Source: Mobula hypostoma (taxonomy: Eukaryota). Taken from it: a DNA stretch of 64,000 nucleotides. A program made the position numbers and the translations under genes. Positions within the stretch are counted from its first letter, which is position 1. Each line of letters opens with the position of its first letter. Shown in pieces: positions 27,445-57,696 of the stretch. The notes under the pieces are model-generated. The model was not told where the DNA came from. It ran no database searches and saw only the letters and a program-made list of their open reading frames with translations. The DNA lies in the NCBI RefSeq assembly GCF_963921235.1, contig NC_086128.1, positions 70,370,001-70,434,000 on the forward strand. The letters run 5' to 3'.

Positions 27445-27517
27445 ACTAAAACGCGCAGCGTTGAGTAGCAGAATCCCAGCGAAAGGGAGGAATGGAGTTG
27501 AGACAGAATCGATCTAT
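27445..27517 (-). pseudogene. Relic of a diverged GPR139-like paralogue (TM5 piece)
   Basis: Translates IDSVSTPFLPFAGILLLNA versus LDSVLSPFLPFAGILLLNA in gene A. Aligns to about 33346-33420 with an 11-nt deletion. Confidence 0.75.
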
Positions 27518-27799
27518 TATTGATGCTGATCAGACGTCTCCAGCAAAGGCTGATATACGTTATTGTGTGATTAGACGTATGACTGACAACCAACTTGAGA
27601 TAATAAAATTTTTGAATCGTATTTAGAGGTCAGACCATCTTCGTTCCTCATGGAATTGGAGTGGTGCTGCCTAATCTAAAATCTGTGAGCGCCCCGTTGA
27701 ATAGTTGTACACCAATATCGTCAATGTCTCATTGATGTAAACTTATGCAACGTCTGGTAATCCAGCGCTTCAATTATATTTTGGGAAAGAGAGATGATA

Positions 27800-28205
27800 T
27801 AGTGTTTTAAGCGAACTAGGGCTTTACTCTTTGGAGAGAAGGAGGATGAGAGGAGACATGATAGAGGTGTACAAGATAATAAGAGGAATAGATAGAGTGG
27901 ATAGCCAGCGCCTCTTCCCCAGGGCACCACTGCTCAATACAAGAGGACATGGCTTTAAGGTAAGGGGTGGGAAGTTCAAGGGGGATATTAGAGGAAGGTT
28001 TTTTACTCAGAGAGTGGTTGGTGCGTGGAATGCACTGCCTGAGTCAGTGGTGGAGGCAGATACACTAGCGAAGTTTAAGAGACTACTAGACAGGTATATG
28101 GAGGAATTTAAGGTGGGGGGTTATATGGAAGGCAGGGTTTGAGTGTCGGCACAACATTGTGGGCCGAAGGGCCTGTACTGTACTGTACTATTCTATGTTC
28201 TATGT
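27800..28205 (+). mobile_element. CR1 3' end
   Basis: LERRRMRGDMIEVYKIIRG...FFTQRVVGAWNALP with a ttctatg tail. Confidence 0.93.
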
Positions 28206-30960
28206 TTATCGTGGACTTTGGAAGGGTAGAATGACATTCGATTCAGTTTTATGTTTGGAAGCACAGTTAAATAAAAAGTGTAAAAGCTGATATTGAAAAG
28301 GCCGATGGTACGCTATGGAAGGACCGACTTTTGCTGAGATTACGGAAATCAGGAATGAGAGAGAGATTGTGTCTCTTTTTCTGAGTTGTTTATTTGGACG
28401 TCCTGTGCAGGGAGGGTGGGCAAGTTTTATCTGTGTTTCAATGAGGTAGAGAATGGGACCGAACAAGGCAGCATTTGTAGACATCTAATATATATTATTT
28501 AATATCGCGATTCATGATATTTACTCTGAGACGGTGATGGGGTAGGTAAATCACGATATGCAGATGATGGAGCTTTATAGATGAGAGGTAGAAATTTCTA
28601 TTTTACTGTATATAGGATGCAATTCGCAATTAATGAGGTCGAACAGGAGGCAAATACACTAGTGTATTTGAAAGTGTATGGTCAAACTCCTGAGATGTCA
28701 ATGGTAAGAATTCCAGGCTTGTGCGAGGATAATATGCTCACATGGAAGCACCATCTCAGTAAACTAATTGATAACTAAGGAGCGTTAAATATTCTCAGGC
28801 GTATCTGTGGGTATTCTTGGGGTGCTGCACGAAAATCTTTGCTGACCGTTTATATTCGCTTCATTATATCTGTTCTTCATTGTGGCTGTCTGCCTCATGG
28901 ATCAGCTTCATCTTCAACTTCAAAATATTTGGATGTGACACAAGCACAGGCTGCAGATAATTCTGCTCACACAATGTGACATTCTTAGGGTACTACACGA
29001 AAATAATTGTTGACCTGACCATTTTTATTTGTTTAATTAGATCTGTTCTTGATTATGGCTGTGTGGCTTATGGATCAGCTTCATCTTCAACTTTAAATTG
29101 GTTGGATGTTATACAAGCCGAAGCTTTAAGGCTGCGCTGTGGTGCAGTAAGTTCATCCCCTTTTCCGGCTTTACTGGTTGAAATGGGGCAATTACCCGTA
29201 CAGTTTCGGATGTTGAATTCGATGCTAACTATAGGGGATTAATTTGAGGGGGCAAAGAAATGATCATTCTGTTAAAGTGTGCTGTAGGACTGTTGGTAAC
29301 ATCACACAAAGAGTGCTTTTAGTTTCGGGTGGCTGGGATATTATCACGCTTCTATGTGAATATGCAACATGTCCCACTGTCGTGTTTTTTAACGCCACCT
29401 TGTTTTTTCCAATGAATTTAGATGAGATTAGATTATGAGGACACTCAGTCCTCGTTTAATGTCATTTAGAAATGCATGTATTAAAAAATGATACAATATT
29501 CCTCAAGAATGATATCACAGAAACACAGGGCAAACCAAGACTAACACTGACAAAACCACATAATTATAACATATAGTTACAGCAGTGTAAAGCAATACCG
29601 TAATTTGATAAAGAGCAGACCATGGGCACGGTAAAAAAAAAGTCTCGAGGACCGATAGCCCCATCATCTCACGCAGACGGTAGAAGGGAGAAGCTCTTCC
29701 TGCCATGAACCTCCGAGCGCCGCAAACTTACCGATGCCGCACCATTGGAAGCACCCGACTGCAGCTGAGTCTGGGTCCGTCCGAAAACTTCAAGCCTCCG
29801 ACCAGCCCTCCAACACCGAGCACCGAGCGCCATCCTCTGCTGAGCGCTTCGACTCCGCCCCGGCCGCCGAGCAACAAGCAAAGCCGAGGACTCTGGGCCT
29901 TCCCCTCTGGAGATTCTGGATCACACAGTAGCAGCGGCAGGGAAGTAGGCATTTCAGAATTTTCACGAGATGGTTTTAGCTTACACGATTTAATAAAGTC
30001 TAATGAATCTGTTATGCCTGAGAGTCTGTTGGTTTATCAGTATATTATGGAAAATTAGTACGATATGTTAGCCGTTTTTACAGGTGGGTCAAAAGATAAT
30101 TCAACTGGGAATATTGGTGCAGCTGTTTTGGGCCGGAATTACAGGTAACGATAAAGACACAACTTATGAACAATCTATCAGTAAATACAGCAGATTTGGT
30201 TGCCATCATTTTAGGGTTAAAGTGGGGGGGGGGGAGAAATTTATTCATATAAAGTTGTACGCAATAGGTCAGATTTATTGTTGGAAACTAATCAAACATC
30301 ATTTCATTTACAAAGTATCGGTTTGCATGACAACTACTTATGGGTCCCTGCAGATCGAGCTGTTGAAAGGAATGAGGGGTTGATCGTTCAACTACAAAAG
30401 CTGATAAAAGTTCCACTGCGGATAAAGACCTCCACTGAGCAAATCGGAAGCGAGGGATTTGGTAGGGTTCACAATTAGGGGCTTATAGCAAGACAGCTGG
30501 GATAATGGGCATAAGGGAAGAAATTCTTACAGAATACCGAAACTGTTGGTATTGTAGGCGAAGGGGTAAATCAAGAATGGTAAATTATATTGACGTGGCT
30601 GAGCACACGATGCTTAATTTTTCCTTATACCTTGTTGGAAAACATCATTTTGTGTCGTGTAGGTTTTGTCATTGTGAAGATGTTTAACACATACATTCAA
30701 CTTTAGGTTGAAATAAATCAAACACAGTCTTCATTACAATCTTCGTGGGTTAATATTTTTCATCAAAAAACCTTATTAATTTATGCACTGACTTTAATTT
30801 AATTCACAGTATTGTATTTCATTACGTTTTGGTGTAATTTAGCCTTCATTTGAAGAAAAGAGTAGTAAGGGATTTATTTCCCAATTCTCTGTACAACACT
30901 CCAGTCCTTTTGATGGCGGGAATGCGCCTTAAAGTTGGAGAGTTAGCCGCCATTTATCCA
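28205..30960 (+). mobile_element. Highly degraded Nimb/I-clade LINE (RT, RNase H, 3' UTR)
   Basis: YADDGAL; IRSVLDYGCVAYGSASSSTLNWLDVIQAEALRL.CGA..SSP..ALLVEMGQLP; RNase H-like FTGGSKD; 3' end shared with 51130 and 53770. Confidence 0.8.
29420..29972 (-). mobile_element. Second copy of the 22205-22878 retroposon
   Basis: Homologous sequence; absent at the equivalent site of duplicon B (about 52860). Confidence 0.7.
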
Positions 30961-31235
30961 AATCCCGCCCTATTCTTTCACGTCAGCCAATCATTCAAAG
31001 GGAAGACGGACACAGTTGCAATTGACATTGGATTAGTCCACCAGCATCATCTAGCCTCCTGCCGTCCTCTGGAAACTGTGAAGTTGGTGGATGTGAATGG
31101 GAATACATGGACATATCCATAGACCAATAGATGGGCTGTATTCCGGAGTGGTCCTTTGATTTACATCTGGTAGGGTCAATGAATCGCCGGGACGGTGATC
31201 TGCCAGGCAACCCCTGCCTCACACCCCTCCCCCCA

Positions 31236-31289
<54 letters not shown>

Positions 31290-31349
31290 TACCCTCATGT
31301 CCTGGAGATGCCGATCGATGGGACAATCCTCCCGGGATAACAACTGGGA

Positions 31350-32925
31350 GATAAGGTGGAAAGCATTAAGTTAAATAAGTCGCGGGGACCAGATAAGATG
31401 TACCCCAGGCTACTGTGGGAGGCGAGGGAGGAGATTGCTCAGCTCTGGCGATGATATTTGAATCATCAATGGGGACGGGAGAGGTTCCGGAGGATTGGAG
31501 GGTTGCGGATGTTGTTCCTTCATTCAAGAAAGGGAGTAGAGGTAGCCCAGGAAATTATAGATCAGTGAGTCTTACTTCAGTAGTGGGTAAATTGATGGAG
31601 AAGATGCTGAGAGGCAGGATTTATGAAGATTTGGAGAGGTATAACATGATTAGGAATAGTCAGCATGGTTTTGTCAAGGGCAGATCGTGCCTTATGTGCC
31701 TCATTGTATTTTTGAGGATGTGACTAAACACATTGATGAAGAAAGAGGAGTAGATGTAGTGCATATGGGTTTCAGCGAGGCATTTGATAAGGTAACCCAT
31801 GCCAGGCTTATTGAGAAAGTAAGGAGGCATGGGATCCAAGGGGACATCGCTTTGCGGATCCAGAACTGGCTTGCCCACAGAAGGCAAAGAGAGGTTGTAG
31901 ACGGGTCATATTCTTCATGGAGGTCGGGGACCAGTGGTGTGCCTCAGGGATCTGTTCTGGGACCCTTACTCTTCGTGATTTTTATAAATGACCTAGATGA
32001 GGAAGTGGAGGGATGGGTTAGTAAGTTTGCTGATGACACAAAGGTTGGAGGCGTTGTGGATAATGTGGAGGGCTTTCAGAGGTTACAGTGGGACATTGAT
32101 AGGATGCAAAACTGGGCTGAGAAGTGGCAGATGGAGTTCAACACAAATAAGTGTGAAGTGGTTCATGTTGGTAGGTCAAATATGATGGCAGAATATACTA
32201 TTAATGGTAAGACAATTGGCAGTGTGGAGTATCAAAGGGATCTTGGGGTCCGAGTCCATAGGACACTCAAAGCAGCTGCTCAGGTTGACTCCGTGGTTAA
32301 GAAGGCATACGGTGCATTGGCCTTCATCAACAGTCAATTTAATTTAGGAGCCGAGAGGTAATGTTACAGATCTATAGGACCCTGGGCATCCCACTTGGAG
32401 TACTACACTCAGTTCTGCTTGCCTTACTAGAGAAAGGATGTGGAAGCCATAGAAAGGGTGCAGAGGAGATTTACAAGGATGTTGCCTAGATTGGGGAGCA
32501 TGCCTTATGAAAATAGGTTGAGTGAACTCGGCCTTTTCTCCTTGGAGCGACGGAGGATGAGAGGTGACCTGACAGAGGTGTATAAGTTGATGAGAGGCAT
32601 TGATCGTGTGGATAGTCAGAGGCTTTTCCCCAGGGCTGAGATGGTTACCACAAGAGGACACAGGTTTAAGGTTCTGGAGAGTAGGTACAGAGGAGATGTC
32701 AGGGGTAAATTTTTTACACAGAGAGTGGTGAGTGCGTGGAAAGGGCTGCCGGCAACGGTGGTGGAGGCGGATACGATTGGGTCTTTTAAGAGACTTTTGG
32801 ATAGGTACACGGAGCTTAGAAAAATAGAGGGTGAGCACAGTAATTTCTAAAGTAGGAACATGTTCGGCACAACTTTGTGGGCTGAAGGGCCTGTATGGTG
32901 ATGTATGTTCTCTGTGTTTCTATGT
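31350..32925 (+). mobile_element. 5'-truncated CR1 inserted about 50 bp past the stop of receptor A
   Basis: RT motifs [11 protein letters not shown] and KFADDTK; absent from duplicon B. Confidence 0.95.
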
Positions 32926-32974
32926 GAAGAACTGAAGACCGGACTAGAGACACACTTCCATCTCTGGCTTGTGC

Positions 32975-33882
32975 TCAGTACACGGTTTTTTTAATGTACT
33001 GAAGTAACGAGGTGACTAGATATTTCACCGCGCTGATCATTTGCTCCCTGAATTTCGACTGAGTCACCGAGTAAATAAATGTGTTCGTGCAGCAGCTGAA
33101 ATCCCTCAGTAAAACCCCGATATAGTGAAATATCCATTCAGAATCATTGAAATCGAATCCTTTTCCTGAGACCTGATAATATATGAACTTTACAACCAGT
33201 GTTAACCACAGGAGGATGAAGTTGCCGGAGAGGGTGAAGAGTAAAACCACAGACCTCCTCCTGCTCTCCATCTCCGGGTCACTGCGGATCTCCCCCTTGC
33301 TCTGACCCTTCAGCCCCTTGCGGGCCCGACTGGAGACTAAAATGTGTCTGACTGTCAGAGCGTTGAGCAGCAGGATCCCAGCGAAAGGCAGGAACGGTGA
33401 TAAAACCGAGTCGAGCCAGTCATAGGCTACCCACCCGGGGTCAGTGAAAACATTGTCCATGAGATCACAGAACCACGGTACACTGTCGATGATCTCCTTG
33501 GGCTCCCATGTGAAATATCGGGGAATATTTTTCATGCAGAACAGTATGCCGGTTATTGTTAGAAACACAGTCGCGGTTTTCCCGGTGCAGTATTTTATTT
33601 TCAGCTTCTGGCAGCAAATGGCGACAAACCGATCAAAGGTGAAAGTAACGGTGAACCAGACAGAACAGTCTGTGGCTGTGTATCTCACTGTATCAATAAC
33701 ACTGCACACTGGGGTGATGCTCAGAAAACTCCACGGGAAGTAATACAAATTGATTTGATTCAAAATTACCTGGGTGACAACGGTCAGTAGATCCGCCGCT
33801 GCCATGGCCACCAGGTAGCGAGTGGTGCAGGTAGAGAGGCCGCACTTCCCCCGGGACAGGATCGCAATCGCTACTAAATTCA
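32975..33882 (-). CDS. GPR139: GPR139-like class A GPCR gene A, exon 2 (327 aa with exon 1)
   Basis: TM2 YLVAMAAADLL, TM3 CSVWFTVTFTFDRFVAIC, TM5 PFLPF..ILLLN, TM7 SCCTNTFIY. Acceptor (CT)n-ctag|TGAAT, phase 1. The symbol is a family label, not an orthology claim. Confidence 0.92.
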
Positions 33883-33885
33883 CTA

Positions 33886-33928
<43 letters not shown>

Positions 33929-34841
33929 TGAAGACATGTACTGGGCATGGCTGAAATGACTGGACATACAATCCGAAAATTAACGCGGGCTCGTGTTTCA
34001 GCCGAAGATCAGGAGTGCTCGAGTGTGAACGGCTGCTAATCTAACATCAGACAGGAGCCACAGTGCCCCTGACCTGCCGGCTTCAGTGTGGAGATAACAC
34101 GATGTGTGGGAAATCATCAGCGATAAAAACGAGCTGCACGAACAACAACGATCGGAGCTCTACCCGATTCCCGTCGCTGATGGGGCCGGTTTGACTGATT
34201 TAACCGTGACTGACCAGGCCTCTGGAAACTCAGCACCTGATGTGGCCGAGAAGGGATACAGAGGGGAGAAACACACACAAAGCCCTGGAAGAACTCAGCA
34301 GGTCAGGCAGCATCCATGGAATTGAACAAACTCACGTTCTGGGCGAGATCCTTCTTCAGGACGAAGGTACCCCAATTTGGGACGAGTCTCAAACAGACAG
34401 CAGGGATAACTTAGTTACCAGAGACCGGGTGGTTCCGTGAACGGATTAATTCTACAGCGCAGTTCGGCAGATCAGTGGACACTGGTTCAGTTGATGAAAC
34501 CCAATTAATGACTAACAAGTAGTGGGATCCGACTGTGACAGACTACAGGGAACCGTGACACAGAACTAGGGGTTCAATCCGCTCAATAACTCAGAAACAG
34601 TGAACTTCCCAACGTAAACCCTTCTCAGTGAACTTTATAAAGTATACCCTTCCCAGGGTTTTAAATTCCCATTCATTGCCTCCTAGTCAGCCCTTCCCGG
34701 AAAGCTGCCTGTCTCCAGCACTGGTACAAATCTGAACAAAGTATCATTAAAGACAAGAACAACGTTCGATTTGATCCCGTCAGTTCGAGGAGAGACAGAG
34801 GATTCGTTTCGTTTGCCATTAATTCTGAAAAATCAGAATGT

Positions 34842-36007
34842 CAAATAATAACGATGTACAATTTTAAATTGAATTAGAGAATGACTGGCACAAATCGAAG
34901 AAGAGTTAACCAGCTTCAAAATTCGCAACCAATCCTCTGTTATCAAGGTCATATTAAGCTCTCTTTCCAATCTTACTTGATCTTAAGTAAAGGATAATTG
35001 TCCTGTTGTCCTGTAAATCATAAATGTTCCAAATAAAGGCTTTCACTAAAAGGTTCATTTTTAAAATAATGTCTAGCAGGTCAGAATCTTGTATATATGG
35101 AAAATTACTTAAATATTCTTGTAAAAAATGTCTGACCTGAAGATATTGCAAAAAATGTGAATATGAGAATATGTCTAAAAATTTTTCCTAATGTAAATAG
35201 TCAGTGTGATAGATGCAAAACTGAGATAGCTGCATTGACACATATGTTTTGGTCGTGTTCTGTACTGGAACAATTTTGGAAATCTATTTTTTCTATAATC
35301 TCTAAAACTTTAAGAATCAATTTACAACCTAATAAATTGACAGTTTTGTTTGGTGTAATTCCTCAACATATTCACGGTATTTCTATTTCTGACCAATATG
35401 TAATTGCATTTGTCACATTATTGGCTAGAAGGGCTATTTTACTAAAATGGAAAGATGCCTCTGCTCCCATTTTGATACAATGGTTCTCTCAGGTGATGTT
35501 ATGTCTTAGTTTGGAAAAAATTAGAAGTCGAACTTTTGATCCTAGAGGTGATGTTATGTCTTAGTTTGGAAAAAATCTGAAGTCGAACTTTTGATCCTAG
35601 ATTTGACTTCGAGAAAAGGTGGGGTTCTTTTGCCCGTTATTATCATTTGACTTGAGTTAATAAAGATGGTCCTTTTCTGATGCTTGGTTATATGGGTTTG
35701 GTTGGCGGTTTGATGTCTTTTTTTTATGGAAGATTGTATGGCGTATAGCTCCGGGGTTGTGCTCCAAATGGGGTTTTTCCCCTTTTTTTTGTTATGAGGG
35801 TTTTTCTCTGTTTTAGTTAGTAGGGGTTCTTTTTTCCATAAAAAAAGCTTTAATACTTTGTTTTTGATTATTATTGAAATACTGTTTAGCCTGGTTGATA
35901 GGTTAACTTTTACTCTACGTATGGATATGTTATCTTGATTATTTTGATGTATTTTTCTCTGTAGTTGATTTTCAATAATAATTAATAAAAAGATTTAAAA
36001 TGAAAAA
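34842..36007 (+). mobile_element. 5'-truncated, 5'-inverted L1-clade LINE in the intron of receptor A
   Basis: 15-bp TSD GAAAAATCAGAATGT (34827-34841 and 36008-36022), empty in gene B. The minus piece runs QYLQVRHF...IQFKIVHRYYL; the plus piece has CDRCK....LTHMFWSC and then an A-rich tail. Confidence 0.92.
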
Positions 36008-36158
36008 GAAAAATCAGAATGTTGAATTGACCGGGTCGATATCTCTGTCGGATATTTGTGCAATGATCATTAAGTTGAAAGCTTGTAAAATGACCATAAA
36101 CAGGATCAGACCGGTTAACACACAGAAGTACTAAACATCAATTGCTCTACTCACTCAC

Positions 36159-36234
36159 CAGGAACTCCAACGACGGCAATGAACACGTACAATATTCTGT
36201 GCACACTCAGATACCTATCCAACAATGCAGCCAT
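36159..36234 (-). CDS. GPR139: GPR139-like gene A, exon 1 (MAALLDRYLSVHRILYVFIAVVGVP)
   Basis: 76 nt from aaaATGG to CCTG|GTGAGT. It supplies the first half of TM1, and 76+908 nt = 328 codons. Confidence 0.9.
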
Positions 36235-36619
36235 TTTCTCTGTCCGGTGATTTGTCTCCCAGTGCTACAGGCGACCTCTGGGACAGAAATGTTGAGGCAA
36301 CACATACCTGGGGTTTTAATACCTTTTAGCGACTCCACAGGGACAGATTTCAACAGATTTAAAAATAAAAATTTTCCAGTTATTTATAAACCGATTACGT
36401 CAGACAAGTGCAATTCCCTGGGTGATCGATTGTATTGTTGTGCTTATACATGTATGTGTGTTTGTGCTTGTGTCTGTGTATGTGTTTTTCTGTCAGTGTT
36501 TGTCATTCTATCTGTCTATGTGTGTTACTGTGTGTATACGTGTGTGTGTGTATGTGTGTGTGTGTGTGTGTGTGGGCGTGTGTGGGTGGGCGGGGGGGTT
36601 TGCACTCGTGGGGTAGGAA

Positions 36620-36890
36620 TAGACCCATTGTCTCTGCCTGCTTCTGCCCGACTGAACTCGTGTCTGTATACCCCGAATTCATTTTGTCCCCCTTGGTTCA
36701 GTCCCGTCCCATTTAACTCCACGAACTGCACATGCTCCCGAACTCTTCAGCAACTTTAATAATCCCTGGTCCTGATTGCCATGGATTATTTTGACCATGG
36801 ATATCCAGTAACTATACACCTCTGTCCCAAGAAGGTCTTAAGCACTCCGCTTCTTTCTCGACAACACATCCAACCAGTTCAGCTTCAACG
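36620..36890 (+). mobile_element. Old Penelope RT fragment (paralogue at 58100-58370)
   Basis: PIVSACFCPTELVS...ILSPLVQS, TMDIQ.LYTS and EGLKALRFFL. Confidence 0.75.
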
Positions 36891-36919
36891 ATACTTTATT
36901 TGGAATCAGAGAGCACCAT

Positions 36920-37620
36920 AACAAAGAAGCAGAACCTTTTGCCATTTCGTCCGCATCGAATTGTTATTCTGCCGAGTCCCATAACCGTACCTGGAGCATA
37001 GTCCTCAATTCACCTCCCGTCTATGTACTTACCCAAACCTCTCTTCAATGTAATCAAACCCACATCCACCACTGCTACTGGCAGTTTTTCCCCATGCCCG
37101 CACCCCACTCTGAGTGAAGAAATTCCCATTCAGGTTCCCCTTAAATATTTCACCTTTCACCCTTACACTGTGACTTCCAGTGACAGTCTCACCAACCTCA
37201 GTGGAAAAATCCTGCCTGCATTTACTCTACCAATAACACTCATATTTTTGTATACCTCTGTGGAATCCTCCATCATTTTCCTACCTTCCGGGGAATAAAG
37301 TCCTAACCTTTTCAACCTTTCCCTGCAACTTATGTCCTCAAGTCCCAGCAAACGTATTGTCAATTTTCTCTGCACTCTTTCAACTTTATTGATATTTTTT
37401 TCAGCAGGGAGGTAACGCAAATTGCACAGATTACTCCAAATGAACCCTCAACAACAACTTATACAACTTCAACATAGCACCCAGTCTCCTGATTTATGGT
37501 ACTCTCTCCTGGTACTTTGATTTATGAAGGCCAATGTGACAAAAGTTTTCTACACGACACCACTTTCAAGTAATTGTGAATCTGTGTTCCCAGATCCCTC
37601 TGTTCTGCAACACTCCTCGG
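36920..37620 (-). mobile_element. Degraded CR1 3' fragment (paralogue at 58400-59110)
   Basis: INKVERVQRKLT..L.GL....ERLKRLGLYS. Confidence 0.8.
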
Positions 37621-37639
37621 AGCCCTATTGGTCGCCGTG

Positions 37640-48800: not shown

Positions 48801-48835
48801 AACTTCTGCTCCTTTGTCTTATGGTCTTATGGTCT
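45820..48835 (+). mobile_element. Defective CR1 LINE (ORF2 APE and RT, 3' UTR)
   Basis: [32 protein letters not shown]; many stops; (cttatggt) tail. Confidence 0.95.
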
Positions 48836-49429
48836 AATCCTGAAGCTCAAAACTAATAGAATGGCCAAAGCTGGAGGACTGTCGGGGACATCACTAGAAG
48901 AGTATTTTTATATTTTGATGGCTCGGTTCTTATCATACTACAGATATGGGATTGTCGGGTTATGCAATGTGTCCTACTGCCGTGTTCTGTAATCCCACCT
49001 TGTTTTTTTCAAATGACCTTAGTTGATTTTATCTTACATAATTTAATAAAGTTTACAGATTTTGTTATGCCTGAGAGTCTGTTGATTTATCAGTATATTA
49101 AGAACGATTATTGTGGAATGTTAACCGCTTTTGCAAATGGATCAAAATATAATTTAAGAAGGAATGTTGGTGTGTCTGTTTTTGTGCCTGAATTACAGGT
49201 AGCGATAAATAAACAACTTAAAAACCATTTACAGGATAGACAGCAGAACTGGTTGGCATAATTTTAGGCTTACACTGGGTGGAGGAAATTTGTTCATGAA
49301 AGTTGTAATTTGTTCAGATTACTTTTCGGTTTTGATGAGTCTAAAAAAAGGCCATTACTACAGGAGGTCAGAATTACTGTTGGAAACTCATCAGACTGTT
49401 ATTTCATATACAAAGTATTGGTTTATATC

Positions 49430-50190
49430 ACAAACAAGAGAAAATCTGCAGATTTTCAGGTCTACAGATCACAGGCGACACTTCACCTGTGAGTCGGCTG
49501 GGGTGATATACTGCGACCGGTGCTCCCGATGTGGCCTTCTATATATTGGCGAGACCCGACGCAGACTGGGAGACCGCTTTGCTGAACACCTACGCTCTGT
49601 CTGCCGGAGAAAGCAGGATCTCCCAGTGGCCACACATTTTAATTCCACATTCCATTCCCATTCTGACATGTCTATCCACGGCCTCCTCTACTGTAAAGAT
49701 GAAGCCACACTCAGGTTGGAGGAACAACACCTTATATCCCGTCTGGGTAGCCTCCAACCTGATGGAATGAACATTGACTTCACAAACTTCCGCTAAAGCC
49801 CCACCTCCCCCTCTTACCCCATCCGTTATTGATTTTTATACACATATTCTTTCCCTCACTCTCCGTTTTCTCCCTTTGTCCCTCTGACTATACCCCTTGC
49901 CCATCCTCTGGGTTCCCCCCTTGTCTTTCTCCCTGGGCCTCCTGTCCCATGATCCTCTCATATCCCCTTTGCCAATCACCTGTCCAGCTCTTGGCTCCAT
50001 CCCTCCCCCTCCTGTCTTCTCCTATCATTTTGGATCTCCCCCTCCTCCTCCAACTTTCAAATCTCTTACTAGCTCTTTCTTCAGTTAGTCCTGACAAAGG
50101 GTCTCGGCCTGAAACATCGACTGTACCTCTTCCTAGAGATGCTCCCTGACCTGTTGCGTTCACCAGCAACTTTGATGTGTCTTGCTTGAA
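49430..50190 (+). mobile_element. Penelope element 3' part with GIY-YIG endonuclease
   Basis: FTCESAGVIYC.RCSRCGLLYIGETRRRLGDRFAEH...VATHFN...EQHLI.RLGSLQPDGMN, with a short inverted terminal piece at the 5' end. Confidence 0.92.
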
Positions 50191-50555
50191 AATCTGCAGA
50201 TGCTGGAAATTCAAGCAGCACACACAAAATGCTGGAGGAACTCAGCAGGCCAGGCAGCATCTATGGAAAAAAGCACAGTCGATGTTTCGGGCCGAAACCA
50301 TTAAGCAGGACTGGATTTAAAAAAAAAAAGCTGAGGAGGACATTTGGAAGGTGGGTGAAGGGGAGAGCGGAACACCAGACGCTTGGAGTGGAAGGTATGA
50401 AGCAAAGAGCAGAGAGGTTGATTGGTGAAAGAGAATGAAGGTCATGGAAGAAAGAGAATAGGGAGTAGGGGGAACGAGGAGCGGCAAAGGGAGGAGATGG
50501 GAGAGATAACATGAGAGAGGGAAAGGGGGATGTGAAATGGTGAAGGTGGGTGAAG
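50190..50555 (-). mobile_element. Penelope terminal-repeat fragment, tail-to-tail with the previous element
   Basis: aaatctgcagatgctggaaattcaagc... with a degenerate hammerhead at about 50276-50312. Confidence 0.75.
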
Positions 50556-51694
50556 GCATTTTGGGGTTCCTTCACACAGAGCTGTTGAGCGGAATGAGAG
50601 GGTTAACTGTTTAGCTAGAAAAGCTGTTAAAAATTCATTTGTGGATACTAACCTTCCCATTAAGCTAAGGAGTTGGTATGGTTAACAACTAGGGGCTAAT
50701 GGAAAGTCTTGTGGGAGAATGGGCGTAAGGAGAGACACCTTTACAGAATACATAACAGTGTTGGGTTTCTGGGAGAAGAGGGTAAAACACGAATGGGAGG
50801 AATTAAATTGACACGACTGAGAATTCGGCTTGCTACGCTTAATTATTCCTTATATCTCTTTGGAAAGCATAATTCTGGGTCTTGTATGTTTTGTCCTTAT
50901 GAAACAGATGAGCACATACTATTACAGTGAGCAGCATATCACGTTGAAAAATGGTTGAAAGATGAAAGATGGCTGATAGTTTTCATCTAAAAACTTTATT
51001 AATGTATGGCAGTGAATTTAATCTAATTCACAGTATTGTCTTTCAATACTTACAATCTATAGGGTTTTTGCAGTAAGTTGGCTTTCATTTGGGGGAAAAA
51101 AGGATGCAGGAAGGATTTTATTTCCGAATTTTCTGCACCACACTTCAGACAAGTTGGTGGTGGGAATGCACCTTTAAGTTGGAGTGTCGACCACTATTTA
51201 CCCCAAACCGCGCCCTATTTCTTCACTTAGACCATAAGACCATAAGACAAAGGAGCAGAAGTCGACCATTCTGCCCGTCGAGTCTGCTCCGCCATTTTAT
51301 CATGAGCTGATCCATTCTTCCATTTAGTCCCACTCCCCCGCCTTCTCTTTAGCCAATCATTTAAGGGGAAAGCGGAGACTGGTGTGAATGACATTGGATG
51401 AGCCAACCAGCATTAGGCTAGGCCCCTGCCGTGCTCTGAGAACGTCGGATTGTGAGGTAACTGGGCGTGAATGGGAATGGATGGATATATCCACAGACCA
51501 ATGGGTGGGCAATATTGTTTGACTGACACCTGGCGGGCCAATGAAGTACAGAGTCGCCAAAATGGTGCTTTGCCCTGCTCCTCTCCCACACAATGCTAAT
51601 CTCCGGAGCTGTCTGTCGATGGGACAATCCACCCAGGAATAACATCTGCGAGGTCAGGCAGTGAAAGGGAGAAGACAATGTAGCCGCATTTGCT

Positions 51695-51797
51695 TTGTGC
51701 TTAGGACGTGGTTTAGTTAATAAACTGAAGCACCGTACTGACCGGATATTTTACCGAGCCAATCACCTGCTCTCTGAATTTCGACTGAGTCACTGCT
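51695..51797 (-). pseudogene. 3'-end relic of another GPR139-like paralogue, truncated by CR1
   Basis: AVTQSKFREQVIGSVKYPVSTVLQFIN* aligns with the helix 8/C-tail of A and B. It has the same downstream module at 51355-51640. Confidence 0.85.
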
Positions 51798-51799
51798 TT

Positions 51800-52700
51800 C
51801 TGGATGATGGGGTGGTAAATTGGATTATTAAGTACGCAGATGCTACTAAGATAGGTGGAGTTGTGGATAATGAAGTAGGTTTTCAAAGCTTGCAGAGAGA
51901 TTTAGGCCAGTTAGAAGAGTGGGCTGAAAGATGGCAGATGGAGTTTAATACTGATAAATGTGAGGTGCTACATTTTGGTATTGTAGAATGCAGTAGAACA
52001 GAGGGATCTAGGAATAATGGTGCATAGTTCCCTGAAGGAGTAATCTCATGTGGATAGGGTGGTGAAGAAAGCTTTTGGTACGCTGGCCTTTATAAATCAG
52101 GGCATTGAGTTTAGGAGTTGGGATGTAATGTTGAAATTGCACAAGGCATTGGTGAGGCCAAATTTGGAGTATTGTGTACAGTTCTGGTCATCGAATTATA
52201 GGAAAGATGTCAACAAAATAGAAAGAGTACAGAGAATATTTACTAGAATGTTACCTGGGTTTCATCACCTATGTTACAGAGAAAGGTTGAAAAAGTTGAG
52301 TCTTTATTCCTTGGAGCGTAGAAGGTTGAGGGGGGACTTGATAGAGGTGTTTAAAATTATGAGGAGGATAGATAGAGTTAAAGTGTTTAGGCTTTTTCCA
52401 TTGAGAGTAGGGGAGATTCAAACAAGAGGACATGATTTGAGAGTTAAAGGACAAAATGTTTAGGGGTAACATGAGCGGGAACTTCTTTACTCAGAGAGTG
52501 GTAGCTGTGAGGAACAAGCTTCCAGCAGAAGTAGTAGAGGCAGGTTCGATATTGTCATTTAAAGTTAAATTGGACAGCTATATGGATAGGAAAGGAATGG
52601 AGGGTTATGGGCTGAGTGCAGGTCGGTGGCACTAGGTGAGAGTAAGAGTTCGGCACGGACGAGGGCCGAGATGGCCAGTTTCTGTGATGTAATTATTATA
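51800..52700 (+). mobile_element. 5'-truncated CR1
   Basis: KYADATKIGG and LVRPNLEYCVQFWS. Confidence 0.93.
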
Positions 52701-52704
52701 TATG

Positions 52705-53850
52705 GTCACGCTGATAAAGTGTGCTGTAAGACTGTTGGGAACATCACACGAAGGGGGCTTTTAGTTTTGGGTGGCTGGGTTCTTATCACACTTGAAGATG
52801 AATATGCAATATGACCCACTGTCGCGTTCTCTAACCCACCTTGTTTTTCCCATGAATTTAGATGACTTTAGCTTACACGATTTAATAAAGTCTAATGAAT
52901 TTGTTATGCCTGAGATTTTGTTGGTTTATCAATACATTACGGAAAATTAGTACAAATGTTACCCGTTTTTACAGCTGAGTCAAAAGATAGTTCAACTGGG
53001 AATATTAGTGTGGCTGTTTTTGGGCCGGAATTACAGGTAATGATAAAAAAACAATTTATCAGTACATACAGCAGATTTGGTTGCCATGATGTTCGGCTTA
53101 AAGTTGGGGGGGGGGGGAATTTGTTCATGTAATGTTGTACGCAGTAGGTCCGGTTTATTGTTGGAAACTAATCAAACATCGTTTCATATACAAATATATC
53201 GGTTTACATGATAACTTTTTAGGGATTCCTGCAGATCGAGGTGTTGACAGGAATGAGTGTTCAGCTACAAAAGCTGGTAAAAGTTCAACTGCGGATAAAG
53301 ACCTTCACTTAGATAATCGGAAGCGAGGGGGTTGGTAGGGTTCACAATTAGAGGCTTTTGGCAAGACAGCTGGGATAATGGGCATAAGGGGAGAAACTCT
53401 TACAGAATACCGAAACTGTTGGGATCGTAGGAGAAGGGGGTAAAACAAGAAGGTAAAAATTATACTGACATGGCTGAGCACACGATGCTTAATTTTTTCC
53501 CTATACTTTGTTGGAAACCATCTTTTTGGGTCCTGTAGGTTTTGTCATTGTGAAGCAGTTGAACACGTACATTCAACGTAAGGTTGAAAGAAATCAAACG
53601 CAGTCTTCATTACAATCTTTGCGGGGTAATAGTTTTCATCAAAAAACTTTATTAATTTACGGCAGTGACTTTAATTTAATTGACAGTGTTGTGTTTCAAT
53701 ACGTTTCCGTGTAATTTAGCTTTCATTTGAAGATAGAAGTAGTAAGGGATTTATTTCCCGATTCTCTGCACCACCCAATTCTCTGCAATCCTATTGATGG
53801 TGGGTATGAGCATTTAAGTTGGAGAGTTAACCGCCATTTATCCAAATCCA
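52705..53850 (+). mobile_element. Nimb/I-clade LINE 3' fragment (paralogue of 29260-30960)
   Basis: Collinear with unit A and has the same 3' UTR. Confidence 0.8.
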
Positions 53851-54149
53851 GCTCTATTTCTTTACGTTAGCAAAGCATTCAAAGAAAAGGTGGACACTAT
53901 TGCAATTGACATTGGATTAGACCACCAGCATCATACTAGCCTCCTGCCGTCCTCTGGTAACGTCAGACTGTGAGGTTGTTGGGCGTGAATGGGAATAGAT
54001 GGACATATCCATGGACCAACGGATGGGCTGTATTCGGAGTAGTTCTTTGACGGACATCTGGTGTGGTCAATAAGTCGCCGGGAAGATGCTCTGCAATGCC
54101 CCCCGCCCACCTGCTCCAACACACACACACGCACACAGTGGAGACCGGA

Positions 54150-55090
54150 CTAGAGACACGCCGGCCGCCTCTGGCTTGTGCTCAGAACGCGTTTTCTTTT
54201 AATGTACTGAAGTAACGAGGTGAACGGATATTTCACCGCGCTGATCATCTGCTCCCTAAATTTCGACTGAGTCACCGCGTAAATAAATGTATTCGTGCAG
54301 CAGCTGAAATCCCTCAGTAAAACCCCGATATAGTGAAATATCCATTCAGAATCATTGAAATCGAATCCTTTTCCTGAGACCTGATAATATATGAACTTTA
54401 CAACCAGTGTTAGCCACAGGAGGATGAAGTTGCCGGAGAGGGTGAAGAGTAAAACCACAGACCTCCTCCTGCTCTCCATCTCCGGGTCACTGCGGTTCTC
54501 CCCCTTGCTCTGACCCTTCAGCCCCTTGCGGACCCGACTGGAGACTAAAATGTGTCTGAATGTCAGAGCGTTGAGCAGCAAGATCCCAGCGAAAGGCAGG
54601 AACGGTGATAAAACCGAGTCGACCCAGTCATATGCCACCCACCCGGGGTCAGTGAAAACATTGTCCATGAGTTTACAAAACCACGGTACACTCTCGATGA
54701 TCTCCTTGGGCTCCCATGTGAAATATCGGGGAATATTTTTCAGGCAGAACAGTACGCCGGTTATTGTTAGAAACACAGTCGCGGTTTTCCCGGTGCAGTA
54801 TTTTATTTTCAGCTTCTGGCAGCAAATGGCGACAAACCGATCAATGGTGAAAGTAACGGTGAACCAGACAGAACAGTCTGTGGCTGTGTATCTCACTGTA
54901 TCAATAACACTGCACACTGGGGTGATGCTCAGAAAACTCCACGGGAAGTAATACAAATTGATTTGATTCAAAATTACCTGGGTGACAATGGTCAGTAGAT
55001 CCGCCGCTGCCATGGCCACCAGGTAGCGAGTGGTGCAGGTAGAGAGGCCGCACTTTCCACGAGAGAGGATCGCAATCGCTACTAAATTCA
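54150..55090 (-). CDS. GPR139: GPR139-like class A GPCR gene B, exon 2 (338 aa with exon 1)
   Basis: Same motifs as gene A, with 14 amino-acid differences before the tail. Acceptor tttctag|TGAAT. The C-tail is extended by a +1 indel. Confidence 0.92.
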
Positions 55091-55382
55091 CTAGAAAGAG
55101 AGAGAGAGAGAGAAAGGAGAGATGAGGACAGGTACTGGGCATGGCTGAAATTACTGAACATATAATCCGAAAATTAACACGGGATCGTGTTTCAGCTAAA
55201 GATCAGGAGTGCTAGAGTGTGAATGGCTGCTAATCTAACATCAGACAGGAGCCACAGTGTCCCTGACCTGTGGAGATAAGAAAATAACACGAGAATTTTT
55301 GCAGATGCTGGAAATTCAAGCAACACATATTAAAGTTGATGGTGAACGCAGAAGGCCAGGCAGCATCTCTAGGAAGAGGTAC

Positions 55383-55418
55383 AGTCGACGTTTCGGGCCG
55401 AGACCCTTCGTCAGGACT
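55383..55418 (-). ncRNA. Minimal type I hammerhead ribozyme motif, sense to receptor B pre-mRNA
   Basis: Identical to the 45020-45055 motif. Confidence 0.8.
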
Positions 55419-56438
55419 AACTGAAGGAAGAGCTAGTAAGAGATTTGAAAGTGGGAGGGGGAGGGGGAGATCCAAAATGATAGGAGAAGACAGGAGGAGG
55501 AGGGATGGAGCCAAGAGCTGGACAGGTTATAGGCAAAAGGGATATGAGAGGATCATGGGACAGGAGGCCCAGGGGGAAGGAAAAGGGGCAGGGGGGGAAA
55601 TCCAAAGGTTGGGCAAGGGGTATAGTCAGAGGGACAGAGGGAGAAAAAGGAGAGAGAGAGAAAGAATGTGTGTATATAACTAAATAACGGATGGGGTACG
55701 AGGGGGAGGTAGGGCATTAGCGGAAGTTAGAGAAGTCAATGTTCACGCCATCAGATTGGAGGCCACCCAGACGGAATATAAGGTGTTGTTCCTACAACCT
55801 GAGCGTGGCTTCCTCTACTGTAAAGATACCTGTGAGTCGGCTGGGGTGATATACTGCGTCCGGTGCTCCCGATGTAGCCTCCTATATATTGGCGAGACCC
55901 GACGCAGACTGGGGGATCGTTTTGCTGAACACCTACGCTCTGTCCGCCGGAGAAAGCAGGATCTCCCAGTGGCCACACATTTTAATTCCACATCCCATTC
56001 CCATTCTGATATGTCTATCCACGGCCTCCTCTACTGTAAAGATGAAGCCACACTCAGGTTTGAAGAACAACACCTTATATTCCGTCTGGGTAGCCTCCAA
56101 CCTGATGGCATGAACATTGACTTCTCTAACTTCCACTAATGCCCCACCTCCTCCTCGTACCCCATCCGTTATTTATTTATATACACACATTCCTTCTCTC
56201 TCTCTCCATTTTCTCCCTCTGTCCGTCTGACTATACCCCTTGCCCATCCTCTGGGTCCCACTCCCCCCCCCCTTTTCCTTCTCCCTGGGCCTCCTGTCCC
56301 ATGATCTTCTCATATCCCTTTTGCCAATCACCTGTCCAGCTCTTGGCTCCATCCCACTCCCTCCTGTCTTCTCCTATCATTTTGGATCTCCCCCTCAGCC
56401 TCCCACTTTCAAATCTCTTACTAGATCTTCCTTCAGTT

Positions 56439-56474
56439 AGTCCTGACGAAGGGTCTCGGCCCGAAACGTCGACT
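56439..56474 (+). ncRNA. Minimal type I hammerhead ribozyme motif
   Basis: agtc ctgacga a ggg tctcgg ccc gaaa cgtc gact. Confidence 0.8.
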
Positions 56475-57406
56475 GTACCTCTTCCTAGAGATGCTGCCTG
56501 GCCTGCTGCGTTCACCAGCAAATTTGAGGAGATAGGACGATATGTGGGGAATCATCAGCGATAAAAACGAGCTGCATGAATAACAACGATCGGAGCTCTA
56601 CCCGATTCCCGTCGCTGATGGGGCCGGTTTCACTTATTTAACCGTGACTGACAGGGCCTCTGGAAACTCAACATTTGATGGGGTCGAGAAGGGATACAGA
56701 GGGGAGAAACACACACAAAACACTGGAGGAACTCAGCAGGTCGGGCAGTTTCCATGGAATTGAACAAATTCACGTTTTGGGCGAGATCCTTCTTCAGGAC
56801 GAAGGTACCCCAATTTGGGACGAGTCTCAAACAGACAGCAGGAACAACTTAGTTACCAGAGACTGGGTGGTTCCGTTAATGGGTTAATTCTACAGCGCAG
56901 TTCAATTCGATAACACACGTCGGCAGATCCATGGACACCGGTTCAGGTGATCAAACCCAATTAATGACCAACAAGCAGTGGGACCCGATTGTGACAGACT
57001 GCAGGGAACCGTGACACAGAACTAGGGGTTCAATCCGCTCAATAACTCAGAAACAGTGACCTTCCCAATGTAAACCCTTCCCAGGATTTTAAATTTCCAT
57101 TCATTACAGCCCAGTCAGGCCTTCCCGGAAAGCTGCCTGTCCCCCAGCACTGGTACGATTCTGAACAAAGTATCATTAAAGACAAGAACAATATTCGATT
57201 TGATCCCGTCAGTTCGAGGAGAGACAGAGGATTAGTTTCGTTTGCCATTAACTATGAAAAATCAAAATGTTGAATTGACCGGGTCGATATCTCTGTCGGA
57301 TATTTGTGCAATGATTATTAAGTTGAAAGCTTGTAAAATGACCATAAACAGGTTCAGTCCGGTTAACACACAGAAGTACTAAACATCAATCGCTCTACTC
57401 ACTCAC

Positions 57407-57482
57407 CAGGAACTCCAATGACAGCAATGAACACGTACAATATTCTGTGCACACTCAAATACCTATCCAACAATGCAGCCAT
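57407..57482 (-). CDS. GPR139: GPR139-like gene B, exon 1 (MAALLDRYLSVHRILYVFIAVIGVP)
   Basis: 76 nt with donor CCTG|GTGAGT; 76+941 nt = 339 codons. Confidence 0.9.
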
Positions 57483-57696
57483 TTTCTCTGTACCAGTGAT
57501 TTGTCTCCCAGTGCTACAGGCGACCTCTGGGACAGAAATGTTGAGGCAACACATACCTGGGGGTTTTAATGCCATTTAGCGGCTCCACAGGGACAGATTT
57601 CAACAGATTTTAAAATAAAGATTTTTCAGTTATTCATAATCCGATTACGTCAGACAAGTGCAATTCCCAGGGTGATCGATTGTGGTATTGTGTTTA

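What the first reader, a model, noticed from the sequence alone, without database searches (positions are those of the whole stretch)
27445..57482. Birth-and-death tandem array of divergent GPR139-like orphan receptors (2 intact genes, 2 relics)
Seen: four same-strand paralogue traces in 30 kb; three share the same downstream module (Nimb 3' end plus about 260 bp). The intact genes have a very short N-terminus, DRF instead of DRY and NTFIY instead of NPxxY. Known: mammalian GPR139 and GPR142 are single-copy receptors activated by aromatic amino acids. Inference: this is part of a lineage-specific multigene repertoire evolving like chemosensory or immune receptor families. I know of no established function for it, which makes it the best candidate system in the window.
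Basis: partly seen in the sequence, partly recalled or inferred. Interest (0 to 1): 0.72.

Follow-up and report, generated by a model that had tools for sequence, protein, structure and literature searches.

The report
Duplicated orphan receptor genes in ray
This stretch of devil-ray DNA carries two working-looking copies and two broken scraps of a cell-surface receptor gene from a very large shark-and-ray gene family that no searchable paper describes; it may be a set of sensing receptors, but nobody has yet shown where the genes are switched on or what they detect.

Summary
On the minus strand lie two intact class-A GPCR genes and two short relics: 51683-51838 (end of TM7 to the stop codon) and 27457-27513 (part of TM5).

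- Each gene has two coding exons. g1 is 36159-36234 plus 32975-33882 (327 aa). g2 is 57407-57482 plus 54150-55090 (338 aa).
- The two genes are about 95% identical to each other. They sit in a roughly 23-kb tandem segmental duplication.
- dN/dS is 0.29, and both copies have the same pocket residues.

The genes belong to a family with more than 2000 database proteins, all from cartilaginous fishes wherever a name was given. Human GPR139 is the best solved match, but only at about 20% identity. Only one of its six agonist-contact residues is kept. Four of those six positions are among the 23 most variable of 327 in the family.

New here: a maximum-likelihood tree places the family as sister to a gene that appears single-copy in amphibians and sturgeon (support 100/99; alternative placements rejected, p-AU ≤0.002). 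The intron position and ICL3 motifs are shared with that gene.

The promoter is conserved between this ray and skate paralogues.

I found no RNA data and no paper, so a sensory role remains untested.

The scan has reported this same family before, on other pieces of this genome.

The parts
36159..36234 (-). g1 coding exon 1 (ATG at 36234). It encodes 25 codons plus the first base of the split Val26 codon: MAALLDRYLSVHRILYVFIAVVGVP.
   Evidence: A tblastn search with family N-termini gives 100% identity to P0001 residues 1-25. The donor is CCTG|GTGAGT.
33883..36158 (-). g1 intron (phase 1, 2276 nt). It holds a multi-copy repeat insertion at about 34842-36007. Its 3' end is conserved and ends in a (CT)n tract.
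   Evidence: The repeat is covered at high depth in related genomes.
32975..33882 (-). g1 coding exon 2, from Val26 to the stop codon. The spliced product is 327 aa.
   Evidence: Pfam 7tm_1 hit at E 5e-20. The spliced translation is open. It is 94% identical to P0001.
36235..36450 (-). g1 5' UTR and promoter, with conserved boxes: GGGAATT..CTGACGTAA (bZIP/CRE-like), ATTTTTAAATCTGTTGAAA, CTGTCCCTGTGGAG and TATTAAAAC (TATA-like).
   Evidence: Alignment A2 with g2 and three skate paralogue promoters. Sequence shown.
57407..57482 (-). g2 coding exon 1 (ATG at 57482).
55091..57406 (-). g2 intron (2316 nt), with an inverted Penelope-like insertion (GIY-YIG) at about 55271-56524.
54150..55090 (-). 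g2 coding exon 2. The spliced product is 338 aa. A 1-nt insertion in the last codons replaces the final 4 aa with a 15-aa tail.
57483..57700 (-). g2 5' UTR and promoter, with the same boxes as g1.
51683..51838 (-). Relic 3: the 3' end of a family gene (end of TM7, helix 8 and the stop codon). The 5' part is missing.
   Evidence: tblastn 51-55% identity, HMM E 3.6e-8, blastn 77% over 99-115 nt.
27457..27513 (-). Relic 4: a 57-nt fragment of TM5.
   Evidence: blastn 80-82% identity, E 4e-9; HMM E 6e-4.
29968..31254 (-). Downstream module of unit A (g1).
   Evidence: Self-BLAST gives 84% identity to 52860-54137; a MAFFT realignment gives 86.9% identity, K2P 0.145. It is 70-78% identical to 49021-51516.
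52860..54137 (-). Downstream module of unit B (g2). It starts 12 nt after the stop codon.
49021..51516 (-). Downstream module of the older unit C (relic 3).
31255..32932 (+). 5'-truncated LINE fragment, inserted between g1 and its downstream module.
   Evidence: RVT_1 hit at E 3e-19. It is absent from unit B.
36541..45535 (-). Duplicated upstream block of unit A. Its counterpart in unit B is 58027-63871.
   Evidence: Colinear self-BLAST blocks at 78-84% identity, K2P 0.13-0.14.

Best explanation
The locus is a small tandem array from a class-A GPCR family that is hugely expanded in cartilaginous fishes and that databases label 'probable GPR139'.

How the array arose. A segmental duplication of roughly 23 kb copied a whole two-exon gene with its promoter and flanks, giving g1 and g2. 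Two older copies decayed into fragments. Transposable elements then landed in the introns and flanks.

State of the two genes. Both keep an open reading frame, intact splice sites and the family's conserved promoter. They evolve under purifying selection and have identical residues at the predicted orthosteric pocket. They are therefore most likely two functional and nearly redundant receptors.

Family picture. The intracellular face is almost invariant: ICL1, DRF-ICL2, TM5-ICL3 with RVRKGLKG...DPEMESRRRS, NTFIY and helix 8. The extracellular half varies about twice as much, with the peak at positions homologous to the GPR139 agonist contacts.

Inferred mechanism (not shown). Many paralogues each bind a different small ligand in the classical transmembrane pocket. 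All signal through one common transducer and are driven by a shared promoter logic. This would make the family a ligand-diverse, probably chemosensory, repertoire.

Origin. The family descends from an ancient jawed-vertebrate gene that survives, apparently as a single copy, in amphibians and sturgeon.

My odds. About 0.85 for the gene, duplication and family account. About 0.35 for a chemosensory role specifically. The confidence figure given for this explanation refers to the first of these.
For: Gene models:
- The exon 1 peptide is 100% and 96% identical to the N-terminus of P0001.
- GT-AG splice sites are present and the spliced ORFs are open.
- The same acceptor position is seen in skate-type loci L001-L003 and L005 and, with the same phase, in the sturgeon sister gene L006.

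Duplication:
- Colinear blocks link 29968-45535 to 52860-63871.
- K2P divergence is 0.13-0.145 in the flanks, 0.085 in the intron and 0.041 in exon 2.

Selection:
- There are 15 synonymous and 15 nonsynonymous changes; dS is 0.071, dN is 0.021 and omega is 0.29; Fisher p = 0.0013.
- None of the substitutions falls at a pocket-homologous position.

Family:
- 2081 hits at E<=1e-5, and 112 clusters at 50% identity with E<=1e-30. All named hits are chondrichthyan, including Callorhinchus.

Fold:
- The AF2 model has pLDDT 90.2 and pTM 0.86, with seven TM helices plus H8.

Variability:
- Entropy is 1.82 bits in the outer half and 0.90 bits in the inner half, p = 6e-19.
- Positions 3x32, 3x33, 6x51 and 7x38 rank 7, 23, 20 and 15 of 327 for variability.
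- In close skate paralogues omega is 1.64 (outer) against 0.34 (inner); the N:S contrast gives p = 0.004.

Promoter:
- It is conserved across five ray and skate paralogues.

Sister group:
- The tree supports it at 100/99*, and the AU test rejects both alternatives at p = 0.0017 and 0.0009.
- The search is reciprocal.
- The motifs KYCTxKT, RVRxGLK and DPEMxxRRxS and W6.48 are shared.
Against: - No transcript evidence. No RNA run holds the locus, and the contigs laid on it are genomic and show no exon1-exon2 joint.
- No ligand, tissue or cell-type data exist, and I found no paper on the family.
- An outer omega above 1 is not significant (p = 0.12). The variable pocket could therefore reflect relaxed constraint rather than selection for new ligands.
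- The low divergence of the gene body, intron included, could partly be gene conversion rather than selection.
- Each copy carries two or three substitutions at fairly conserved positions, and g2 has a frameshifted tail. One copy could therefore be sliding towards loss.
- A more variable extracellular half is common to many GPCR subfamilies.
Confidence: 0.8

Rival explanations
1. The family is an internal (neuro)endocrine or metabolite receptor set, for example for peptides, amino acids or amines. It would be expressed in brain, gut or endocrine tissue, as GPR139 and GPR142 are, and would not face the outside world.
For: - The nearest solved relative is GPR139, a brain receptor, and its close homologue GPR142 is a gut and pancreas receptor (PMC7318219).
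- By Foldseek the fold is closest to peptide receptors such as GHSR, AT2R and GALR2.
- The sister gene appears single-copy and is conserved at 66-74% among amphibians. This is typical of a housekeeping signalling receptor.
Against: - Endocrine receptors rarely expand to around a hundred tandem paralogues with many pseudogenes.
- The pocket positions are hypervariable.
- Only one of the six GPR139 agonist contacts is kept.
Confidence: 0.3
2. The family is an immune or leukocyte receptor repertoire, chemokine- or formyl-peptide-receptor-like, that diversifies under pressure from pathogens.
For: - It shows birth-and-death dynamics and a variable extracellular half.
- Some members are auto-named 'C-C chemokine receptor type 3-like'.
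- CCR8 appears among the Foldseek hits.
Against: - The automatic names are inconsistent: capa receptor, vasopressin V2 and tachykinin also appear.
- There is no sequence affinity to chemokine receptors beyond the generic class-A level.
- There is no immune-type regulatory or expression evidence.
Confidence: 0.1
3. The copies here, and much of the family, are functionally dispensable products of genomic drift in a TE-rich, duplication-prone region. Their apparent conservation would be due to recent gene conversion rather than selection.
For: - The gene body, including the intron, is less diverged than the flanks (0.085 against 0.14).
- Relics and TE insertions are abundant.
- g2 has a frameshifted C-tail, and both copies carry changes at conserved sites.
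Against: - dN is four times lower than the intron divergence, and omega is 0.29 with p = 0.0013.
- The ORFs, splice sites and a promoter conserved between rays and skates are all intact.
- The intracellular face is nearly invariant across 111 paralogues.
Confidence: 0.1

Closest known systems
GPR139 (and its close homologue GPR142), vertebrate class-A orphan receptors activated by L-Trp and L-Phe
   Same: - GPR139 is the best, and at E<=1e-5 the only, solved-structure match (7vug).
- Both have two exons (PMC7318219).
- Both have a TM7 motif NxxxY without the usual proline: NFFLY in GPR139, NTFIY here.
- Both have W6.48.
- Amphioxus 'GPR139' proteins serve as the outgroup to the whole group.
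   Different: - Identity is only about 20%, at 34 bits. True GPR139 orthologues are 70% identical between human and zebrafish (PMC7318219).
- The agonist contacts E108, F109, H187, R244 and N271 are R92, Y93, D183, L254 and V282 here.
- The motif is DRF, not DRY.
- GPR139 is single-copy in other vertebrates. This family has hundreds of copies.
- I could not include GPR139 or GPR142 sequences in the tree, because none was retrievable as a reference.
Apparently single-copy 'probable GPR139' gene of amphibians and sturgeon (P0231 Pleurodeles, P0413 Xenopus, P0415 Microcaecilia, P0429 Acipenser), an unstudied gene
   Same: - It is the sister clade of the chondrichthyan family (support 100/99*; alternatives rejected by the AU test).
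- It is the reciprocal best match.
- It shares the ICL2 motif KYCTxKT, the ICL3 motifs RVRxGLK and DPEMxxRRxS, and W6.48.
- The intron position and phase in TM1 are the same in sturgeon.
   Different: - Identity is about 31%.
- It has DRY rather than DRF, and NMCIY rather than NTFIY.
- It appears to be one gene per genome, conserved at 66-74% among amphibians, so it is not expanded.
- Its function is also unknown.
Conserved jawed-vertebrate 'GPR139-like' gene, next to TMEM183A to judge from fused gene models (P0234 coelacanth, P0281 catshark, teleosts, amphibians, turtles, squamates)
   Same: It belongs to the same wider GPR139 group, has the proline-less NxxxY motif, and is the next clade out in the tree.
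   Different: - Sharks have their own orthologue of it, 66% identical to coelacanth. The expanded family is therefore a separate paralogue lineage.
- It has ERF instead of DRF and lacks W6.48.
Vertebrate chemosensory class-A repertoires (OR, TAAR)
   Same: - Large tandem clusters with intact genes and pseudogenes.
- A conserved signalling face with a hypervariable transmembrane pocket.
- A promoter motif set shared by the paralogues.
- A short N-terminus.
- Cartilaginous fishes have notably few ORs (PMC8455134).
   Different: - There is no sequence relationship beyond class A.
- The coding region is split by an intron, whereas OR and TAAR coding regions are intronless (from my own knowledge).
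- There is no evidence of expression in sensory neurons or of one-receptor-per-cell choice.

Membership tests
Class A (rhodopsin-like) GPCR, Pfam 7tm_1 | Seven transmembrane helices plus helix 8, and a match to the 7tm_1 profile | tested here: met
   The PF00001 hit has E 5e-20 and 3e-20, above the curated cut-off. The AF2 model has pLDDT 90.2 with TM1-7 and H8.
Class A (rhodopsin-like) GPCR, Pfam 7tm_1 | Canonical micro-switch motifs E/DRY, CWxP and NPxxY, and the TM3-ECL2 disulfide | tested here: inconclusive
   The motifs are variants: DRF (109-111), LLWLT (W6.48 present, but no C6.47 and no P6.50) and NTFIY (no P7.50). The Cys85-Cys164 pair is conserved. Such variants also occur in GPR139.
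GPR139 orthogroup | High sequence conservation across vertebrates (human-zebrafish 70%) | tested here: not met
   The match to human GPR139 is 34 bits, E 1.7e-7, about 20% identity. The 70% figure is from PMC7318219.
GPR139 orthogroup | Agonist pocket residues E3x32, F3x33, H5x43, W6x48, R6x51 and N7x38 | tested here: not met
   g1 and g2 have R92, Y93, D183, W251, L254 and V282, so only W6x48 is identical (alignment plus counting).
GPR139 orthogroup | Two-exon gene | tested here: met
   There are two coding exons, with a phase-1 intron in TM1. The literature statement is in PMC7318219. The exact intron position in GPR139 was not compared.
Chondrichthyan expanded 'GPR139-labelled' family (as seen repeatedly by this scan) | Placement inside the family clade and possession of its signature motifs (SRGKCGLS, DRFVAICCQKLK, RVRKGLKG..DPEMESRRRS, CCTNTFIY) | tested here: met
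   g1 and g2 fall in a batoid subclade with P0001 (100/100*), inside the family clade (93/93). All the motifs are present.
Chondrichthyan expanded 'GPR139-labelled' family (as seen repeatedly by this scan) | Conserved family promoter upstream of exon 1 | tested here: met
   Alignment A2 shows invariant blocks shared by g1, g2 and three Rhinoraja paralogues.
Chemosensory receptor repertoire (functional class) | Large, clustered family evolving by birth and death, with its variability in the ligand pocket | tested here: met
Chemosensory receptor repertoire (functional class) | Expression in sensory neurons or cells, ideally one or a few genes per cell | not testable with these tools
   No RNA run holds the locus, and the contigs laid on it are genomic. 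No supplementary expression tables are held for the catshark atlas.
Chemosensory receptor repertoire (functional class) | Activation by external chemical cues | not testable with these tools
   This needs heterologous expression and ligand screening.

The most novel reading that the evidence does not exclude
The family, including g1 and g2, is a previously undescribed main chemosensory (olfactory-type) receptor repertoire of sharks, rays and chimaeras. It would compensate for their near-absence of OR genes. It would have been built by expanding an ancient jawed-vertebrate receptor that survives, apparently as a single copy, in amphibians and sturgeon. Its conserved promoter would enforce a common, possibly one-gene-per-cell, expression programme.
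Probability: 0.3. Interest if true: 0.85.

Novelty: new variant of a known kind. Interest (0 to 1): 0.55.

Why it matters
Cartilaginous fishes are renowned for their sense of smell. Yet their genomes hold very few classical odorant receptors, and GPCRs are described as relatively scarce in them (PMC8455134).

A class-A family of roughly a hundred or more genes per genome is an obvious candidate for the missing receptors, or for some other ligand-diverse system. It has a fixed signalling face and a pocket that varies exactly where GPR139 binds its agonists. In databases it is hidden under the misleading name 'probable GPR139'.

This window adds three things:
- a clean example of how the family grows, by a whole-gene segmental duplication that carries the promoter, followed by decay of the older copies;
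- the correct two-exon gene model;
- an apparently single-copy sister gene in Xenopus, axolotl and sturgeon. These laboratory animals have rich public expression atlases and genetics, so the ancestral function becomes directly testable.

Tried and rejected
Expression:
- Two searches of public sequencing runs found no run on record as RNA.
- Four runs laid on 32700-36600 gave only short genomic contigs from related species. These covered the introns too, and none of the joints listed joins exon 1 to exon 2 (68 further joints were not shown). The apparent bias towards exons is explained by the many paralogues.
- Short Logan and ENA contigs carrying family ORFs (L001, L002) turned out to be genomic, because intron sequence precedes the acceptor site.

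Literature:
- Eight full-text searches and three papers read found no description of the family.
- The catshark atlas has no supplementary tables held.

Orthologue DNA:
- The Mobula birostris, M. hypostoma, Heterodontus and Cetorhinus loci could not be fetched because the assembly files are too large.
- P0026 is not on record.
- As a result, the duplication could not be dated against speciation, and gene conversion could not be tested.

Bona fide GPR139 and GPR142:
- No sequence reference was obtainable.
- P0234, P0231, P0251, P0261 and P0267 were each tested against the PDB and are not GPR139 orthologues.
- The tree is therefore rooted on amphioxus proteins and lacks GPR139 and GPR142.

Other checks:
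- The structure search does not single out GPR139, which ranks 29th among generic peptide receptors.
- Transcription-factor assignment of the promoter boxes (O/E, RFX, CTCF) was tried by eye only. No convincing match was found and none is claimed.
- The 330-aa single-exon ORFs were rejected as gene models.
- The window has no tRNA or Rfam hit, so the ~275-bp repeat next to the genes remains unclassified.

Full report
**What is in the window**

Two 330-aa ORFs on the minus strand (32975-33967 and 54150-55142) match Pfam 7tm_1 at E about 1e-20. They are 93% identical to each other.

tblastn with these ORFs, and a family HMM run against every stop-to-stop segment of all six frames, find only two more traces. 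Both are on the same strand:
- 51683-51838: the end of TM7, helix 8 and the stop codon, reading 'AVTQSKFREQVIGSVKYPVSTVLQFIN*' (HMM E 3.6e-8).
- 27457-27513: a 57-nt piece of TM5 (blastn E 4e-9, HMM E 6e-4).

So 'two intact genes, two relics' is correct. The relics are small, however, and the two intact genes are near-copies of each other, not divergent.

**Gene model**

Alignment with database relatives showed that homology starts only at 'VNLVAI'. The residues before that point in both ORFs come from a (CT)n run.

The DNA there is a polypyrimidine tract ending in CTAG|TG, which is a splice acceptor. A search with the 25-aa N-termini of relatives found the missing exon about 2.3 kb upstream of each gene. 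The peptide is MAALLDRYLSVHRILYVFIAV(V/I)GVP, 100% and 96% identical to Mobula birostris P0001. It is followed by the donor G|GTGAGT.

The spliced genes are open:
- g1 = 36159-36234 plus 32975-33882, 327 aa.
- g2 = 57407-57482 plus 54150-55090, 338 aa.

A 1-nt insertion in the last codons of g2 replaces the final KTVY with a 15-aa tail.

The same acceptor position is seen in skate-type loci. In the sturgeon sister gene the position and the phase are the same. GPR139 is also reported to be a two-exon gene (PMC7318219).

AlphaFold2 on the 94%-identical P0001, with a 54-sequence alignment, gives a confident seven-helix model (pLDDT 90.2, pTM 0.86). TM1 starts at residue 2, so the extracellular N-terminus is only a few residues long. 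DRF (109-111) and NTFIY (292-296) are confirmed.

**How the array arose**

Self-BLAST shows two colinear units, 29968-45535 and 52860-63871. They share the downstream module, the gene, the promoter and about 9 kb of upstream sequence.

An older third unit keeps only relic 3 and a diverged copy of the module (49021-51516). Unit-specific insertions are:
- a LINE fragment with an RVT_1 hit between g1 and its module (31255-32932);
- a multi-copy repeat in the g1 intron (about 34842-36007);
- an inverted Penelope-like (GIY-YIG) element in the g2 intron (about 55271-56524).

K2P divergence between the two units varies by region:

| Region | K2P |
|---|---|
| Flanks | 0.13-0.145 |
| Promoter | 0.10 |
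| Mid-intron | 0.085 |
| Exon 1 and adjoining intron | 0.034-0.041 |
| Exon 2 | 0.041 |

Within the coding sequence there are 15 synonymous and 15 nonsynonymous changes. dS is 0.071, dN is 0.021 and omega is 0.29 (Fisher p = 0.0013).

dN is therefore about four times lower than the intron divergence, which indicates purifying selection. Because the whole gene body is less diverged than the flanks, I cannot exclude a contribution from gene conversion.

The 14 amino-acid differences are not concentrated in the pocket: 5 are in the outer half, 7 in the inner half and 2 in the tail. The most radical change, D165K, sits at the most variable ECL2 position.

**The family**

- g1 has 2081 database relatives at E<=1e-5. 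The best 120 are all from sharks, rays and skates, and almost all are auto-named 'probable GPR139'.
- An exhaustive profile-free search finds 112 clusters at 50% identity with E<=1e-30.
- Every representative I looked up is chondrichthyan, including a Callorhinchus protein at 48% identity.
- Across 111 full-length members, entropy is 1.82 bits per site in the extracellular half and 0.90 in the intracellular half (p = 6e-19). ICL1, TM3-ICL2 and TM6 are the most fixed.
- For the closest skate-type paralogue pair, omega is 1.64 in the outer half and 0.34 in the inner half. The N:S contrast is significant (p = 0.004), but an outer omega above 1 is not (p = 0.12).
- The about 200 nt upstream of exon 1 is conserved between g1, g2 and three Rhinoraja paralogues. 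It contains a GGGAATT..CTGAYGTMA bZIP-like box, ATTTTTAAMTCTGTTGAAA, CTGTCCC.GTGGAG and a TATA-like element.

These results reproduce, on independent DNA, what earlier agents of this scan reported for the same family.

**Relation to GPR139**

Human GPR139 is the best solved match and the only one at E<=1e-5. The match is weak, however: 34 bits and about 20% identity. Foldseek ranks GPR139 29th, among generic peptide-type receptors.

Of the six agonist-contact residues defined by mutagenesis (E108 3x32, F109 3x33, H187 5x43, W241 6x48, R244 6x51, N271 7x38; PMC7318219), g1 and g2 keep only W6x48. The others are R92, Y93, D183, L254 and V282.

Four of these six positions (3x32, 3x33, 6x51 and 7x38) rank 7th, 23rd, 20th and 15th of 327 in family variability. 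So the family diversifies precisely in the pocket that GPR139 uses.

The genes are not GPR139 orthologues. They are distant members of the wider GPR139 group, whose members shown here (GPR139, this family, the amphibian-sturgeon clade and the conserved jawed-vertebrate clade) all have the proline-less NxxxY motif.

**New result: a sister group outside cartilaginous fishes**

The best non-chondrichthyan hits are salamander proteins (P0231; 31% identity, 128 bits) and a coelacanth protein (P0234).

P0234 belongs to a conserved jawed-vertebrate gene that sharks also possess, with 66% identity between catshark and coelacanth. The expanded family is therefore not its orthologue.

P0231 belongs to an orthogroup in frogs, salamanders, caecilians and sturgeon, with what looks like one gene per genome. 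Its next-best matches are members of the shark and ray family.

A careful maximum-likelihood tree, rooted on amphioxus 'GPR139' proteins, gives this topology:
- (chondrichthyan family + amphibian/sturgeon clade), support 100/99*;
- sister to the conserved clade, support 100/97*.

Forcing either alternative grouping is rejected (p-AU 0.0017 and 0.0009). One caveat is that I named the groups after seeing the first tree.

Shared motifs (KYCTxKT, RVRxGLK, DPEMxxRRxS, W6.48) and the shared intron position and phase support the grouping.

The family is therefore a chondrichthyan expansion of an ancient gene. That gene was not recovered from amniotes or teleosts, within the limits of these searches.

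**What could not be shown**

No RNA run holds the locus, and the contigs laid on it are genomic. No paper in the searchable library describes the family. Tissue, cell type, ligand and G-protein coupling are all unknown. I could not place bona fide GPR139 or GPR142 in the tree.

**Verdict**

The locus itself is an ordinary, fairly recent duplicate pair with decayed neighbours. Its interest lies in the family, which is large, undescribed and built like a ligand-diverse sensor set.

The scan has already reported this family on several other pieces of this genome. This report adds the two-exon model, the pocket-position test and the amphibian-sturgeon sister gene.

Noticed in passing
window 33883-34070 (also 55091-55270); L001 1-162; L005 about 12160-12405: About 130 nt at the 3' end of the intron is conserved between the Mobula genes and skate-type paralogues. 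The shared stretches include ACTCCTGATCTT..GCTGAAA..CGAGCC and ATGCCCAGT. This extends well beyond the branch-site and polypyrimidine region. It could be a splicing element or an internal promoter.
   Followed up: partly
window 33884-33930 and 55092-55115: The polypyrimidine tract of the acceptor site has grown into a (CT)n microsatellite, with about 17 units in g1 and about 9 in g2. It happens to be in frame, and this creates the spurious 330-aa single-exon ORFs.
   Followed up: yes
window 53864-54137, 30979-31254, 51320-51516 and, inverted, 57739-58021: A repeat of about 275 bp lies just 3' of the receptor genes. In unit B only, an inverted copy sits inside a (TG)n run upstream of the g2 promoter, so g2 is bracketed by inverted repeats. 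The element has no tRNA or Rfam match and remains unclassified.
   Followed up: partly
window 3672-5055: A 35-bp satellite array of about 38 copies, with 86% matches between copies.
   Followed up: no
window 7401-7715: A tandem repeat with a 38/77-bp period and about 8 copies.
   Followed up: no
window 49290-49796 and 55756-56139 (+): ORFs with a GIY-YIG domain, typical of Penelope-like retroelements. The element around the second ORF is present as an inverted pair (55332-55816 against 56525-56040, 92% identical).
   Followed up: partly
exon 2 coding sequences of g1 and g2 compared with L001-L005: The synonymous divergence estimated by the Nei-Gojobori method is two to three times lower in the intracellular half than in the extracellular half in every ray-skate pair. 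This could be a bias of the method or a constraint at the nucleotide level.
   Followed up: no
proteins P0234, P0281, P0284 and P0382: A separate, conserved 'GPR139-like' gene is present from sharks to squamates and turtles. Gene models sometimes fuse it to TMEM183A, which suggests the two are neighbours. It has ERF instead of DRY and lacks W6.48. It also appears to be unstudied.
   Followed up: partly
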